In this document: positions 27,110 to 31,996 of the stretch, one piece after another
Layout of the letters: each line of letters starts with the position of its first letter
Position numbering within the stretch: the stretch's first letter is position 1
NCBI GenBank assembly: GCA_020536535.1
Contig: JAHLWZ010000792.1
Span: forward strand, 153,031-217,030
Length of the DNA stretch: 64,000 nucleotides
Reading direction: 5' to 3'
From: Pelomyxa schiedti
Lineage: Eukaryota; Protista; Evosea
Program-made: the position numbers and the translations under genes
Notes under the pieces: model-generated
Told to the model about the DNA's origin: nothing
Seen by the model: only the letters and a program-made list of their open reading frames with translations
Database searches by the model: none

Positions 27110-27559
27110 ATGAGGCACTGCTGCCCGTTGGTGGTGCGCCTTTCCGTGTGCGCGTTCCTGCTGTCTGCCATAGTCTCGGTCAGCCTCCACTGCCGAGACC
27201 ACTACAACCTGCGCCTGGAGCCGCTGCCCGGCAACCTCGTGGCGCTGGCGTCGATGCGCCGCGGGGAGGAGTCCCAGCTCATCGCCATCGGGGCGCGGTA
27301 CATCGCCAAGAACCGCGACGGCGCCGGCAACGCGGTGGTGGTCTGCGACGACATCACGGGCGCGGACGACGGGCTGGGCGAGGGCCTGCACTACCACATG
27401 CGCCTCACGTGGCCCGAGCCCCGCACCCCGGGGCAGCACTGGCGCCTGCGGTGGCGCGCCGTCCTCGGCGCCGTGTGGGTCCTGGGCCCCTGGTGGGCCG
27501 TGCCTGCTGCCGCCGCGGCTGCAGTTGCTTTTGTGGCGTCACCCTTGTTGTGCTTTTGA
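27110..27559 (+). CDS. Small intronless hypothetical membrane or secreted protein (149 aa)
   Basis: ORF with ATG after an A-run, hydrophobic N-terminus (LVVRLSVCAFLLSAIVSVSL), hydrophobic C-terminus, and a core with strong GC3 bias. Confidence 0.55.
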   Translation: MRHCCPLVVRLSVCAFLLSAIVSVSLHCRDHYNLRLEPLPGNLVALASMRRGEESQLIAIGARYIAKNRDGAGNAVVVCDDITGADDGLGEGLHYHMRLTWPEPRTPGQHWRLRWRAVLGAVWVLGPWWAVPAAAAAAVAFVASPLLCF

Positions 27560-27842
27560 GAGAAAAAAAAGAGTGCTGCTGCTGCTGCTGCTGCTTTTTT
27601 TTTTTTTTTTGCTACTGCTGAGCTTGATTATGACCACTCCGCCCATTTTGACTCACTCCTGCTTGATTTGAGGCTTAGAAATGCACTGCCCACATTCCTC
27701 TTCTAATTGTGTGGTGCACAATGTGAAGTCAAAAGCCTGCTATCAATAAACACAACATGAAAGACAAGTTCTTTTTGTTTTATTATTATTGTTGCTACTA
27801 CACACAACAAATGTGGAGAGGGCAAACCGTAACAGCAGTTTG

Positions 27843-30612
27843 TTATTGAAGAAGACATCTGCTATTTGTGTGTGAATTTTTGTACTTGAGGGTGACCCAA
27901 TGTCTGACAGCGTTTTGTAAGAGGGTAACCAAAGACGCAGTAGTGCCAGACATGGCAGAGACCTCATAAAAGGGTAAAGGTAAAATCCATGACCTGTGTA
28001 ATGACACTTAGAATACTTGGTCATAGTTCGGAAATTCACAGCAACCTTGAAGAATCCCTGATTTCTTTGGTTGAAAGGCAGTTTAGACGGGTATCACTTC
28101 TGAGGTCACTGTGTATGAAAGCACTTTAAAATCACCACTTGGAGAAATAAATCGTTACACTTTGGATGCAACTACAATTAACGGAGTGTGTGGCCTATTC
28201 TGTATTATTTCTGGAATCCATTTTTCGTGCTAGGGATGGTTATAGAGAAGCAACATGGTCAAATGGTGTACCATGTGAATCAGAGAGTCGTGCCTGTCAA
28301 CTGAGACCATTAGAAAAAATAGGTCAGCTTGAAGATAACTGCTTGTTGTAACTCAAAGGAAAATCATAAAATAACTGACACTAAAGGTCGCAGGCGGAGG
28401 CTATCATCCTGGGCTGCCTAATGAACGGATGAGGATGGGATGCCTTAAATTGAGTGGCATGGCACACCGTATCCCAAATAGTCACATCGAAACTAGTGCC
28501 ATCCACATCAAGGAAAACTGTTGTATTAGGTTCATAACCCATTGTGGCAGGAGAAGGGCTAAGGGGAGGTGTAACGAATACTAAGGTACTAAGGACTTGT
28601 TGAATACCACCAAGAACCACTTTCAAGTGTTTTAATCAGTGACGTTTTTCCTACACCAGTGTCTCCAACAATAACAACTTGAAGGCTCCGAGTAGCAGTG
28701 GAAATATACTTTCTGATGTTGCGTGTTTTCAGAGCTGCTTGGGCATAAGCAAGCACCTTCCAGTATAAGTTTTAAGAAATACATCAATGAGGAAGTAACT
28801 TGGGATCGTGCAGAAAGTTCAATATCTAACAAGTCGAGAGGGAAGTGTTCCAAAAATTGCAACCATAATTCATCAATGCAAGCTACATGGTACCATTGCT
28901 TACAGACAGCGCCACATCTAATTTAACTGAGCAAGCACAGAAACATAAATTTCTCACCTAGATAAATCAATGGCAGTTTTCAAGAAAGAAAATATGTGGC
29001 GTAAAACGTCATTACCAAGACTGGCCTGGGGGCAGCTCAAACTTTCGCATTCGGTACAAGAAAGTAACAGGCAGACAAGGGGAATTGAGTTTCCTTTTTG
29101 GACAACTTGACCCCCTGTGATAACAAGAGAGTTCCTGTAATGATGTGCACTTCGCCAAAGTAAATAGTTGCTACCTCAAAATGCATGCGGCACCCAAGGA
29201 ATGTGACTCAAAAGTATGGAATGTAGAGTAGTTAATTGCCTGACTTCTCCATGTGCCTTTAGGCAAATTGACTGCATAGACACTCTTGCAGTTATTTGCC
29301 TTCATTCCAGTAGTTCCCCCGAAGATATAGAGCTCCTCTGTGGCAAGGTCCAAGGCATGGGAGAACCCCCACCTATTTCGTCATTTATCTTCAGTTATGT
29401 ATCATGCTGGAAATTCTTGAACAAGTGAGGTAAAGACCTGGAAGCAGGAATATCACCGGTTATTATCACTGGAGACCATTGAAATGTCCTAAGATTCAAC
29501 TTCCACAATACATTTTCCACAAGGTCGTGGCCGTTGGAAGAAAGTCCACCAAAGATAAACATATTTCCCTTGAACTCGCATGATCCATGATAATATCTCG
29601 TAAATGTTACTTGTGTATGGCAAAAAGATGGGAATGTGCCGAGGAGGTATTTCCCCTTGAACAGTGACACAACTCCAGGTATTAGATACAACGGAGTAGA
29701 CATAAAGTTCATTACTTGCATTTCTGAAAAAAAAAATCAACTGGGAGAATTTGGTTGAAAAGGAAACCCATTGCAGTCAAAACCTCCAAATATAAACATG
29801 TTGTCATCAAAAAAAATAGCTGAGTGACCATAGCGCATCTGGTTTGAAAAATATCCCCATTTTTGCCTATTCTCTTTATCTCAGGAGATGACATACTGTT
29901 GGGACACTTGGGCTTGACAGCCCTTGGCGTGAAAGTAGTTTCCACGAGTTAGTAAACAGGGTCAACTGCCAGAGGTCATTCAAGAAAAATCTAATAGAAC
30001 GTGAAACCACCAACATTTTCCTCACAAGGAGAACATACTCATTACGGCCACCAAACACAAGGAGGGAGTCAGAGGAGGGACAATAAACTGAAGTATGATT
30101 CATTCTCCCCAGCAACTCTTCCAGATTTTGGATCAGGAATAGGATTCCCACCAGTAAAATAACACACTGCTATTTCCTGAACTAGCCACTGAGATGCTTG
30201 TGTCCAAATGCACCCACTCTCCCATAATGTCCAGAACCCAAACGTCGTCAAAGAAGCACCTGAGGCCCGCGCCGTCCACGTCGACGCCCCCAAACATCAA
30301 CCCACAAACACTCTCCCGAGATTTCAACAAAGCCACAGACGTCGACGCCGTCGATGAGGAATGCGGCGGTACAACGCGGTCCCCGTAGCCATCGCCATCG
30401 GCAGTGCTGGCGGCAGCTGGTGCGCGAATTGCGTTATGGGACACCACAACGGGCGGCGGCACGGCGGTGATCGTGTGCCCGTGCCTTGGCCCTGGAAGAC
30501 GACCAGATGAGGCCTTACCCTCAGCCACCAATCTGTTGACCCGTCGTGACGTCATGTCGCGCTCGGTGGTCGTGTCGCATTGGATTAGTCGCCAACCAGT
30601 GCGCCGCTTCAT
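27843..30612 (-). CDS. Kelch repeats + F-box + Rho/Ras-like small GTPase ending in CaaX (start at 30555 or 30612)
   Basis: About 5-6 Kelch units (PRHGHT, RMNHTS, RYYHGS; FGG dyads). F-box LGNDVLRHIFSFLKTAIDLSRCGAVCKQWYHVACIDELW. GTPase motifs GDTGVGKT, WDTAAQ...RLRPL, EKWIPEI, SKVD and FYEVSA. Ends CLLQ*. All joined in frame by GT-AG introns. Confidence 0.85.
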
Positions 30613-30695
30613 CTTTCTCCACTTTTTCTTCTACTTTGTTTTATGAGAAAGAAGTTTGCCGATTGATGTTCCGTTGGGTTGCGGCAAGAAGAAGG

Positions 30696-31996
30696 CTACC
30701 AAGAATTCTTGCCTCTGACGCCCTGCATGTATTTGAATACAACATTTGTGAAGTCATCGGCAACGGTCATAAGAATCTATGTTGTTTGGGTTGTATTAGA
30801 GGGCTTTGTGGGATTTGAAGGTACATTCCACGCATTGTAGTCTGGGTACATTTTGTCCACATCTGGAAGACCCCCAAATCTTACTCTGTCCACTCTGTCG
30901 GCGTTACAAAGAGCGATGGTAACAACGTTGGCTGCTGGGTCGACATGAGGTCTGAGGGAATAGTTCACTTTCAATCATTAATGGAGCTGGTTAAGGGCTA
31001 CTTACAAGTGTTGTTCGTGAAACAAAATCGCTTGAGAGACTATGGATATTATGCGGCGGTCAAGGTGCTTCCTTTTCGCGTAAATTCGCCACACCTAAAA
31101 TGCGTCGGAACATGTTAAAAACTTGGTCGGCACACATTGGCACCTCGTTCGGCATGCCCAGGGTCATCCGTCTCATCTGTTGATTGAAGTGTCAGGTTCA
31201 AAGTGATTATACTGTGAGATTTGCATTCTTGTCCTGGCACAGTCATGGAAAAATGCACTGTACATGACGCATTCCTCCAGAGCACTCAGCTCCAGGTCAC
31301 AACCATCAACTGAAGCCTGTGTACATAATTACGGGAAAAACGGATACCCACGATATCCTACATTGTAGGGTACAAAAAAAAAAAAAAAAAAAAAAAGCCT
31401 AAAATACATACAGTACTACAGCCGCTAGGATGGTGGGGGTAAACAGTTCTCAGAATGAAGAGGCCATAAGTTGCAACCCTCAACCAGTGTGACATCCCAT
31501 GCAGCATTGAATACTCCAAAAGGAAACACTCCCCAACTGCCGTTGCCTTGTCCTCTTCATCGTCCTCGTCGTCACCGCACTCTGTCCCACAATGGCCATC
31601 ACTGGGGTCACTTTCTGCCTCACTTGCGCGCACTTTCGCCCTTGACGCAGTGCCTTTCGCAGGGCAATAGTCTTCGTCCTCCCCGTCGCCGTCGTCGAAC
31701 TCCGCGGCCTCTGAGCGCTCGGGGGCGGTGTCGACGTAGAGTTGAGTGAATCGTGCCACGCACTGACGAAGCGCAGCGCGAAGTTGCTCATCGACGGCGG
31801 GTTTGGGTGGCACTTATGGGCTGTGAGCGCCGCGCCACTACGATTGATTTGATTGCGTTGTGTGGTCGGGAGAAAGTAAGTAGGCTCACCGTCTACTGCG
31901 GTACCAAAGAACACGTTACTGAGCAGTCGGCTTACCATCAAAACGTGCAACACCCAACTTGGCGAAGGTTAAACTAACTGTTTTCCCCCTGTTCAT
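30696..31996 (-). CDS. HD-domain phosphohydrolase with acidic N-terminal insertion
   Basis: LHGMSHWLRV, AFFHD, DPGHAERGA, AILFH and NADRVDRVRF in the order expected for the HD family. One internal splice junction (about 31220-31165) is ambiguous. Confidence 0.75.

What the first reader, a model, noticed from the sequence alone, without database searches (positions are those of the whole stretch)
27843..30612. Kelch - F-box - small GTPase - CaaX: a membrane-anchored SCF adaptor with its own GTPase switch
Seen: Kelch repeats, then a clear F-box (about 29019-28863), then a GTPase domain (G1 GDTGVGKT at 28666-28643, switch-I Thr, DTAAQ with G60A, SKVD, EVSA) and terminal CLLQ*. Every junction is joined in frame by GT-AG introns. 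It has the Rho-type RLRPL motif but no Rho insert helix. Established: RhoBTB couples a Rho domain to Cullin-3 via BTB, and LZTR1 uses Kelch-BTB to ubiquitinate Ras-family proteins. Inference: an analogous Cullin-1 (SCF) version that may be prenylated and nucleotide-regulated.
Basis: partly seen in the sequence, partly recalled or inferred. Interest (0 to 1): 0.75.

Follow-up and report, generated by a model that had tools for sequence, protein, structure and literature searches.

The report
Kelch, F-box, Rho GTPase fusion gene
This is a real, spliced and expressed gene of the anaerobic amoeba Pelomyxa schiedti. Its single 684-residue protein joins a Kelch propeller, an F-box (the handle of SCF ubiquitin ligases) and a Rho-type GTPase that ends in a lipid-anchor signal. 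I found this domain order described in no paper.

Summary
A 16-exon gene on the minus strand (30612..27843) encodes NCBI protein KAH3758063.1, "hypothetical protein Pelo_10193", of Pelomyxa schiedti.

- **Transcript:** one 1405-nt RNA contig carries 11 of the 15 splice joints, including the F-box/GTPase joint, so exons 5-16 lie on one spliced RNA contig.
- **Domains:** Pfam on the stored protein gives Kelch (1e-46), F-box-like (43.7 bits against a cut-off of 24.3) and Ras family (3.6e-21). The best solved relatives of the GTPase are RhoB, RhoA and Rac.
one intron is GC-AG. The F-box/GTPase intron is 43 nt, not the nearby 26-nt GT..AG.
- **Family:** two paralogs have the same order, the same 15 intron positions and a C-x-L-Q tail. 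A metagenome fragment also shows the order.
- **Divergence:** this copy is the most diverged. It has G12T and G60A, and LG in place of the F-box LP. All three lack the Rho insert.

Most likely it is a farnesyl-anchored SCF substrate receptor whose Rho domain is an atypical, poorly cycling module rather than a fast switch. Skp1 binding, prenylation and nucleotide handling are untested.

This scan had already found the sister arrangement (Rho-Kelch-F-box) on other DNA of this genome, so I rate this a new variant of a known kind.

The parts
27843..30612 (-). Coding region of the gene (16 exons, 15 introns of 40-65 nt, 684 codons plus stop). Exons: 30612-30168, 30117-30039, 29990-29897, 29838-29768, 29723-29640, 29596-29438, 29372-29175, 29134-28958, 28917-28800, 28756-28608, 28558-28468, 28417-28380, 28338-28272, 28229-28159, 28108-28046, 27993-27843.
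   Evidence: Each exon's translation matches P0001 = KAH3758063.1 residue for residue. P0001 was found with exon 8 alone.
27805..29724 (-). Stretch covered by one spliced 1405-nt RNA contig (exons 5-16 plus 38 nt of 3' UTR).
   Evidence: tables 5 and 8: 11 joints in run X1 (single-cell RNA-seq). None of them appears in the three unspliced DNA runs X2-X4.
29095..30300 (-). Kelch beta-propeller (residues about 105-390, exons 1-8). A further Kelch-like strand lies near residue 47, before a low-complexity insert.
   Evidence: Pfam Kelch_KLHDC2_KLHL20_DRC7 1.2e-46 and Beta-prop_ATRN-LZTR1 1e-31. Single exons also reach the Kelch cut-offs. In the AF2 model, pLDDT is mostly 85-98 over about 150-400, with about 60-90 at 100-150 and dips to 67.
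28857..29019 (-). F-box (residues 416-456), split by the 40-nt intron 28957..28918.
   Evidence: PF12937 43.7 bits (cut-off 24.3) and PF00646 23.3 bits (cut-off 20.5) on P0001. The second half alone scores 22.4 bits on exon 9. Helices 418-426, 431-440, 444-448 and 453-458 in the model, at low pLDDT of 50-66.
28757..28799 (-). The 43-nt GT-AG intron that joins the F-box/linker exon 9 to the P-loop exon 10 in phase 0.
   Evidence: Joint 28754|28798 (cut +2) in the RNA contig. The frame is kept only with this intron. An intron lies at the same position in both paralogs.
29597..29639 (-). The one GC-AG intron (43 nt), between exons 5 and 6.
   Evidence: Joint 29596|29640 with ends CT..GC on the + strand. 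Donor gcacat.
27876..28693 (-). Rho-type GTPase domain (residues 497-674, exons 10-16).
   Evidence: Pfam Ras 3.6e-21. Best PDB chains are RhoB, RhoA and Rac, from 1.7e-23. AF2 pLDDT is 85-95 over most of it.
28643..28666 (-). P-loop GDTGVGKT, with Thr at the Ras-G12 position.
   Evidence: The paralogs have GNGAVGKT and GNPGVGKT.
28382..28473 (-). Switch II: DT (end of exon 11), then AAQDDSLRLRPL (exon 12). Ala stands at the Ras-G60 position and Gln61 is kept.
   Evidence: The paralogs have the canonical DTAGQE.YDRLRPLSY.
28105..28166 (-). G4 motif SKVD, split by the intron 28158..28109.
27954..27965 (-). G5 motif EVSA. It lies only 29 residues after SKVD (37 in ordinary Rho), so the Rho insert is absent.
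   Evidence: Spacing counted in 97 Rho domains. There is no helix between 618 and 627 in the model.
27843..27857 (-). CaaX box CLLQ followed by the stop codon TAA.
   Evidence: The tail is C-x-L-Q in both paralogs and in P0159 and P0216.

Best explanation
**Shown.**
- This is one expressed Pelomyxa schiedti gene. Its 684-residue product reads, from N to C: a low-complexity head, a Kelch propeller (modelled with about six blades), an F-box, a helical linker, an insert-less Rho-family GTPase domain and the tail CLLQ.
- It is one of three paralogs with the same order and the same 15 intron positions, so the fusion is older than the duplications.

**Inferred.**
- The protein is a substrate receptor of an SCF (Skp1-Cul1) ubiquitin ligase. 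It is held on a membrane by farnesylation of the CaaX cysteine; X = Q is a farnesyltransferase-type ending.
- The Kelch propeller brings in the target.
- The Rho domain supplies the membrane address and a partner-binding surface.
- In this copy, G12T and G60A make fast GTP hydrolysis and the normal switch II movement unlikely. The copy still keeps the P-loop Lys-Thr, the switch I Thr, Asp57, Gln61, SKVD and EVSA. I therefore expect it to bind nucleotide but to behave as an atypical, largely non-cycling GTPase (as RhoBTB or Rnd do), not as a rapid on/off switch.
For: - **One gene:** the RNA contig carries 11 joints from exon 5 to the 3' UTR and crosses the F-box/GTPase border. Exon 10 has no ATG and is preceded by an in-frame stop, so the GTPase cannot start on its own.
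- **Identity:** all exons match KAH3758063.1.
- **Domains:** Kelch, F-box and Ras all score above Pfam's cut-offs. The nearest solved structures are Rho, not Ras or Rab.
- **Paralogs:** P0003 and P0004 are 41-45% identical over the full length with the same domain order. All 15 introns lie at equivalent columns.
- **Tail:** C-x-L-Q is conserved in all three paralogs, in the metagenome homolog P0159 and in P0216. Ordinary Rho/Rac in the same hit list mostly end in C-a-a-L.
- **Model:** AF2 is confident for much of the propeller and for the GTPase, and shows no insert helix.
- **Precedent:** RhoBTB shows that a Rho domain with a changed G12 can act as a regulatory part of a cullin adaptor, and RhoBTB3 has a CAAX box (PMC4931677).
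Against: - No experiment bears on Skp1 binding, prenylation or nucleotide binding.
- The F-box of this copy has LG where its paralogs have the usual LP, and the F-box is the least confident part of the model (pLDDT 50-66).
- The Kelch propeller lies N-terminal to the F-box. In well-studied F-box proteins the receptor lies C-terminal, which is where the Rho domain sits here. Which domain binds substrates is therefore open.
- The GTPase of this copy evolves fast (branch 2.7 against 0.29 for P0003), which could mean relaxed constraint.
- RNA does not cover exons 1-4. The RNA run comes from the same study as the genome, so it is not independent of the annotation.
Confidence: 0.55

Rival explanations
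1. A true nucleotide-gated ligase adaptor. The Rho domain cycles between GDP and GTP. In one state it folds back on the F-box or the propeller and blocks Skp1 or substrate binding, as proposed for RhoBTB and Cul3.
For: The RhoBTB autoinhibition model exists (PMC4931677). All nucleotide-contacting motifs and Gln61 are kept. Paralog P0003 has a canonical G12 and DTAGQ, so the family as a whole may cycle.
Against: This copy has G12T and G60A. The structure tool gave no confidence for domain-domain contacts; pTM is only 0.57. No GEF or GAP partner is known.
Confidence: 0.2
2. The Rho domain is the bait. It sits where F-box proteins normally carry their receptor domain (C-terminal to the F-box). 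There it recruits Rho effectors, GAPs, GEFs or GDI to the membrane-bound SCF for ubiquitination. The propeller is then a second receptor or a regulator.
For: The domain order is F-box, linker helix, Rho. The same F-box-Rho-CxLQ tail follows a different head, a 2OG-Fe(II) oxygenase, in P0216. A locked GTPase (G12T, G60A) would suit a constant bait.
Against: The sister family (Mastigella P0154) has the Rho at the N-terminus and the F-box at the end, so position relative to the F-box is not fixed in this lineage. The Rho tree does not show that the F-box-Rho proteins form one clade.
Confidence: 0.15
3. A decaying or neofunctionalised paralog. The gene is transcribed, but its F-box and GTPase no longer work as such.
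For: The GTPase has the longest branch in the tree (2.7). Hallmark residues are changed in the P-loop, in switch II and in the F-box LP.
Against: 684 codons stay open across 16 exons with intact splice sites, and the RNA is spliced. Most motif residues and the CaaX tail are kept. Both domains still pass Pfam's cut-offs.
Confidence: 0.08
4. Two neighbouring genes wrongly merged by the reader and by the annotation.
For: Exons 1-4 lack RNA support. A contig across two genes is not by itself proof of one transcript (caveat printed).
Against: The RNA contig is spliced across the border in frame. The GTPase exon has no start codon and follows an in-frame stop. Two paralogs on other contigs have the same border intron.
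Confidence: 0.02

Closest known systems
Rho-Kelch-F-box proteins of Archamoebae and other protists
   Same: The same three domains occur, and the unusual order Kelch then F-box is shared. P0003 matches P0154 in a circularly permuted way. The Rho domains are 48% identical, and Kelch plus F-box align in one 299-residue stretch at 28%. P0154-type propellers are the best full-length matches to a profile of this family's propeller (100 bits).
   Different: There the Rho is N-terminal, the catalytic Gln is replaced (DTAGEE), the Rho insert is present (spacing 36) and there is no CaaX (tail HQKKVW). Here the Rho is C-terminal, lacks the insert, keeps Gln61 and ends in CLLQ.
RhoBTB / Dictyostelium RacA (Rho-BTB-BTB, Cullin-3 adaptors)
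   Same: A Rho-family domain is fused to a cullin-ligase adaptor module, and the G12 position is changed. RhoBTB3 has a CAAX box (PMC4931677). The invertebrate racA-like proteins in my hit list also lack most of the insert (spacing 28-32) and some end in C-x-V-Q.
   Different: RhoBTB uses BTB and Cul3, not F-box and Skp1-Cul1. Its Rho is N-terminal and it has no Kelch. Human RhoBTB1 and RhoBTB2 have a longer, not shorter, insert. No BTB match was found in P0001.
Rab40 (Rab GTPase plus SOCS box, Cullin-5 adaptor)
   Same: A small GTPase with a C-terminal prenyl signal is joined to a cullin-adaptor box. Rab40 clusters were the nearest named clusters by language-model features (score 0.80, a lead only).
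   Different: It is a Rab, not a Rho, and uses a SOCS box and Cul5. It has no propeller. The box follows the GTPase instead of preceding it (own knowledge).
Kelch F-box proteins (animal FBXO42, plant FBK, ZTL/FKF1) and LZTR1
   Same: Each has a Kelch propeller as substrate receptor of a cullin ligase. Pfam's ATRN-LZTR1 propeller model matches at 1e-31. An insect FBXO42-like F-box (P0045) is the only outside BLAST match to this F-box.
   Different: In those proteins the F-box precedes the propeller (LZTR1 uses BTB), and none carries a GTPase or a CaaX box (own knowledge).

Membership tests
F-box proteins (SCF substrate receptors) | Match to the F-box profile above the curated cut-off | tested here: met
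   PF12937 43.7 bits against 24.3, and PF00646 23.3 bits against 20.5, at residues 416-456.
F-box proteins (SCF substrate receptors) | Conserved Leu-Pro at the start of helix 1 | tested here: inconclusive
   This copy has LG while the paralogs have IP and LP. P0216 (LN) and P0154 (LS) also lack the Pro, so the residue varies in this group.
F-box proteins (SCF substrate receptors) | Binding to Skp1 | not testable with these tools
   No complex prediction or assay is available. The F-box is modelled as helices at pLDDT 50-66.
Rho family of small GTPases | Closest sequence relatives are Rho/Rac/Cdc42, with the RLRPL switch II signature | tested here: met
   Every one of the best 60 PDB chains listed is Rho, Rac, Cdc42 or plant ROP. 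RLRPL lies at 28396-28382.
Rho family of small GTPases | Rho insert helix between G4 and G5 | tested here: not met
   The G4-G5 spacing is 29 here and 27 in the paralogs, against 37 in 67 of 97 Rho domains. The model has no helix there. I therefore call it Rho-type and insert-less, not a classical Rho.
Rho family of small GTPases | Catalytic set: Gly12, Gly60 and Gln61 | tested here: not met
   GDTGVGKT (Thr at position 12) and DTAAQ (Ala at position 60). Gln61 is kept.
CaaX-prenylated proteins | Cys at the fourth residue from the C-terminus followed by two mostly aliphatic residues and X | tested here: met
   The tail is CLLQ followed by a stop. C-x-L-Q is conserved in P0003, P0004, P0159 and P0216.
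CaaX-prenylated proteins | Actual farnesylation | not testable with these tools
   Inferred only, from the rule that X = Q, S, M or A favours farnesyltransferase (own knowledge).
Kelch beta-propeller | Repeated Kelch motifs forming a closed propeller | tested here: met
   Several Kelch profiles score from 1e-46 to 1e-14. The strand pattern fits about six four-stranded blades between residues 47 and 406, with pLDDT mostly above 85 from about residue 150.
RhoBTB | Tandem BTB domains after the Rho domain | tested here: not met
   P0001 has no BTB match at E 0.1 or better. It is an analogue, not a member.

The most novel reading that the evidence does not exclude
F-box, linker, insert-less Rho and a C-x-L-Q tail may form a transferable cassette. 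Such a cassette would turn any binding domain into a farnesyl-anchored SCF receptor that depends on the GTPase state.
- It appears with a Kelch head in Pelomyxa and in the metagenome fragment P0159.
- It appears with a 2OG-Fe(II) oxygenase head in P0216, on a dense, intronless contig that may belong to a virus or bacterium of amoebae.
- The Kelch form may have arisen by circular permutation of the Rho-Kelch-F-box family of the same lineage.

The C-x-[LIV]-Q tail shared by Rho fusions to F-box, BTB and U-box modules would then mark a common, undescribed class of membrane-bound GTPase-ligase adaptors.
Probability: 0.25. Interest if true: 0.75.

Novelty: new variant of a known kind. Interest (0 to 1): 0.52.

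Why it matters
Small GTPases fused to cullin-ligase adaptors are known for Cullin-3 (RhoBTB) and Cullin-5 (Rab40). How the GTPase part controls the ligase is still debated.

This amoeba family would give the Cullin-1 (SCF) version, in a form where the GTPase keeps its lipid anchor at the very C-terminus. The three paralogs differ naturally at the G12 and G60 positions. Together they form a ready-made series for testing whether the nucleotide state, or only membrane anchoring, matters for such adaptors.

The family also offers a likely case of domain permutation within one lineage. The sequence is already deposited as a hypothetical protein and the sister arrangement was seen repeatedly in this scan, so the surprise is moderate.

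Tried and rejected
- **Exon-by-exon Pfam scans.** The Kelch exons and the second half of the F-box scored. The first F-box half and all GTPase exons except the P-loop exon gave nothing, because they are too short. I searched with exon 8 alone, which returned the stored full-length protein, and used that instead.
- **The 26-nt GT..AG at the F-box/GTPase border.** Rejected: it breaks the frame.
- **My first exon 1/2 junction and exon 13 acceptor.** Both were wrong and were replaced after the RNA contig and P0001.
- **Word search with residues 400-684 of P0001.** It found only the protein itself and one unrelated Rac fusion, because this copy's words are too idiosyncratic.
- **Rho-domain tree.** The three paralogs form a clade (SH-aLRT 99), but its place is unresolved. 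AU tests reject neither 'all F-box-Rho proteins together' (p 0.75) nor 'with the Mastigella Rho-Kelch-F-box' (p 0.85). Neither common origin of the cassette nor permutation is proved.
- **Literature searches for an F-box plus Rho fusion.** They found no description. The one paper holding all the terms (PMC3673628) is about HECT ligases and is irrelevant. I could not trace the earlier agent's remark that the design 'was listed for Naegleria'.
- **Atlas feature search.** It gave only sub-threshold leads (Rab40, score 0.80).
- **A second GTPase upstream.** None exists: a six-frame motif scan of the whole window finds one P-loop and one RLRPL.
Full report
**What is there**

Reading the minus strand of 27500-31200 in three frames shows short open blocks separated by 40-65 nt spacers with splice-site ends. 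I built an exon model from them.

The first attempt failed at the border between the F-box exon and the P-loop exon. The obvious 26-nt GT..AG there shifts the frame. A donor 17 nt upstream gives a 43-nt intron in phase 0 and an open frame to the end.

The final model has 16 exons (30612..27843) and 15 introns of 40-65 nt. Fourteen are GT-AG and one is GC-AG.

**RNA evidence**

The one sequencing-run search found an RNA library, X1 (single-cell RNA-seq, labelled protist metagenome), and three unspliced DNA-type runs of one sample. All come from a single study.

Laid on 27500-30900, X1 gives a single 1405-nt contig from 27805 to 29724 with 11 joints. All 11 coincide with my exon borders.
- They include the 43-nt intron between the F-box and GTPase exons.
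- They include the GC-AG intron, printed as CT..GC on the + strand.
- They include an acceptor 3 nt downstream of my first guess for exon 13, which makes the protein read RLRPLVYLQADLFF.

The DNA runs show none of these joints. Exons 5 to 16 therefore lie on one spliced RNA contig that spans part of the propeller, the F-box, the whole GTPase and the CLLQ tail.

Exon 10 contains no ATG and is preceded by an in-frame stop, so the GTPase cannot be a gene of its own. Exons 1-4 are not covered by RNA. The run comes from the same study as the assembly, so it is direct evidence of splicing but not independent of the annotation.

**How I searched it**

Exon-by-exon Pfam scans gave three results.
- Several propeller exons reach the Kelch cut-offs.
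- Exon 9 matches the second half of F-box-like at 22.4 bits.
- The short GTPase exons give only generic P-loop matches or nothing.

I then spent the single exhaustive protein search on exon 8 alone. It returned a stored protein, P0001 (684 aa, 100% identical over the exon). The collection names it KAH3758063.1, "hypothetical protein Pelo_10193 [Pelomyxa schiedti]". Every exon of the final model matches P0001 exactly. All later full-length work used this stored protein. The organism agrees with what earlier agents of this scan had written for this window.

**Domains**

Pfam on P0001 gives three sets of hits.
- Kelch propeller models: 1.2e-46 (KLHDC2/KLHL20/DRC7 type) and 1e-31 (ATRN-LZTR1 type), over residues 105-390.
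- F-box-like: 2.4e-11, 43.7 bits against a cut-off of 24.3. F-box: 23.3 bits against 20.5.
- Ras family: 3.6e-21, at residues 502-652.

Against solved structures, every one of the best 60 chains for the GTPase part is Rho, Rac, Cdc42 or plant ROP, led by RhoB at 1.7e-23.

An AlphaFold2 model was built from a 39-row alignment of paralogs and domain relatives.
- The propeller has strands consistent with about six blades and pLDDT mostly 85-98 from about residue 150.
- The GTPase fold has pLDDT mostly 85-95.
- A helical F-box and linker have low confidence (50-66).
- The first 100 residues are disordered apart from one strand.
- Overall pTM is 0.57, so I draw nothing from domain-domain packing.

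**The GTPase in detail**

The nucleotide-binding set is largely kept.
- The P-loop Lys-Thr is present.
- The switch I Thr is invariant in the three paralogs.
- DT..Q, SKVD and EVSA are present.

Three features depart from classical Rho.
- The P-loop is GDTGVGKT, with Thr where Ras has Gly12.
- Switch II is DTAAQ, with Ala at Gly60.
- The distance from SKVD to EVSA is 29 residues, against 37 in 67 of the 97 Rho domains I measured. The paralogs have 27. The model has no helix there.

From textbook knowledge of Ras and Rho, a side chain at position 12 hinders intrinsic and GAP-assisted hydrolysis. G60A hampers the switch II rearrangement. This is inference, not measurement.

**Relatives**

A word search with P0001 found two P. 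schiedti paralogs colinear over 93-100% of the length, at 41-45% identity.
- P0003 is KAH3732847.1, named "cell division cycle protein 42-like".
- P0004 is KAH3745575.1, named "Ras subfamily protein".

Both have Kelch, F-box-like and Ras in the same order. Both have canonical DTAGQE.YDRLRPLSY, and their tails are CSLQ and CCLQ. P0003's GTPase matches Rac1 and Cdc42 at 3e-48.

I fetched their loci, which lie on two other contigs of assembly GCA_020536535.1. Both genes have 16 exons, and all 15 introns fall at the same alignment columns as here. The fusion, including the intron at the F-box/GTPase border, is therefore older than the duplications.

In a tree of 110 Rho domains the three form a clade (SH-aLRT 99). 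This copy sits on a branch of 2.7 changes per site, against 0.29 for P0003. It is the diverged member. Its F-box also has LG where the paralogs have IP and LP.

**Other organisms**

A search with the GTPase region of P0003 among long proteins, followed by Pfam, gave four kinds of hit.
- **P0159**, from a 2057-bp ENA metagenome contig, reads partial Kelch, F-box, Rho and CVLQ. It aligns with P0003 from the F-box to the last residue (38% over 303 residues, 6e-57). Its frame stays open upstream of the called start and reads a Kelch motif there, so it is cut at the N-terminus.
- **P0216**, from a JGI/NCBI metagenome, reads 2OG-Fe(II) oxygenase, F-box, insert-less Rho, a polybasic stretch and CALQ. 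It lies on a dense, intronless contig.
- **Mastigella eilhardi P0154** reads Rho, Kelch, F-box. This is the sister arrangement that earlier agents reported many times in Pelomyxa itself.
- **Rho-Kelch-BTB and racA-like Rho-BTB proteins** were also found.

P0003 and P0154 match in a circularly permuted way. The Rho domains are 48% identical, and Kelch plus F-box align in one 299-residue stretch at 28%. P0154-type propellers are the best full-length matches to a profile of this family's propeller, by a small margin (100 bits against 94 and less).

The Rho tree cannot place the family. AU tests reject neither grouping I tried. Permutation from the Rho-Kelch-F-box family is plausible but not shown.

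One pattern stands out. All 14 proteins in my set that end in C-x-x-Q are Rho fusions to F-box, BTB or U-box modules. Ordinary Rho/Rac in the same list mostly end in C-a-a-L.

**What it most likely does**

The architecture is shown; the mechanism is inferred.

An F-box above threshold, next to a propeller of the kind used by cullin-ligase receptors, points to an SCF substrate receptor. The conserved C-x-L-Q tail points to farnesylation and membrane attachment.

The Rho domain then gives the address and a partner-binding surface. In this copy it is probably a poor hydrolase, and so closer to RhoBTB or Rnd than to a cycling Rac. RhoBTB provides the precedent: its Rho domain has a changed G12 and is proposed to autoinhibit the Cul3 adaptor, and RhoBTB3 has a CAAX box (PMC4931677).

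Two rivals remain open.
- A real nucleotide gate.
- A bait role for the Rho domain, which occupies the position C-terminal to the F-box where canonical F-box proteins carry their receptor.

Merged genes are nearly excluded. A decaying paralog is unlikely, given the intact 16-exon frame and the splicing.

**Novelty**

I found no paper describing an F-box fused to a Rho GTPase. That covers only the held library.

Three things limit the novelty.
- The protein is already deposited as a hypothetical protein.
- Its paralogs carry generic GTPase names.
- The sister arrangement was found repeatedly in this scan on other DNA of this genome.

The general idea of a GTPase fused to a cullin adaptor is known from RhoBTB and Rab40. 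I therefore rate it a new variant of a known kind, of moderate interest.

I made no search with my own joined translation. The stored protein P0001 took its place.

Noticed in passing
L004 5307-6511 (+), 99 bp downstream of paralog P0004: A DHHC palmitoyltransferase gene lies directly after the paralog whose tail is CCLQ. That tail has a second Cys beside the CaaX Cys, a typical palmitoylation site. This may be chance.
   Followed up: no
L002 6001-7590 (P0216) and its neighbours: A 2OG-Fe(II) oxygenase, F-box, insert-less Rho, polybasic, CALQ protein sits on a dense, intronless 10-kb metagenome contig. Its neighbours include a 1326-aa multicopper oxidase and a glutaredoxin. This looks like a virus or bacterium associated with amoebae rather than an amoeba genome.
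   Followed up: partly
L001 1-2057: P0159 (Kelch, F-box, Rho, CVLQ) is cut at its N-terminus by the contig end or by an intron. Its frame stays open to base 4 and reads a Kelch motif there. A second ORF with an F-box-like match starts 15 nt after its stop.
   Followed up: partly
proteins P0136, P0148, P0151, P0183, P0212, P0232, P0231: C-x-[LIV]-Q tails are shared by Rho fusions to BTB, Kelch-BTB and BTB-U-box modules even when the Rho is N-terminal. Ordinary Rho/Rac in the same hit list mostly end in C-a-a-L. This suggests a farnesyl-type anchor common to GTPase-ligase adaptor fusions.
   Followed up: partly
window 27560-27615: An A-run of about 17 bases followed by (GCA)7 (read on the minus strand) lies just beyond the gene's 3' UTR. 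The reads tool skipped 27500-27622 as a repeat.
   Followed up: no
window 27110-27560 (+) and 26842 downward (-): A GC-rich + strand ORF of 149 aa lies tail to tail with this gene. The next minus-strand gene starts at about 26842 and reads like an NAD-dependent epimerase/dehydratase N-terminus (VLVSGANGYTG). Neither was analysed.
   Followed up: no
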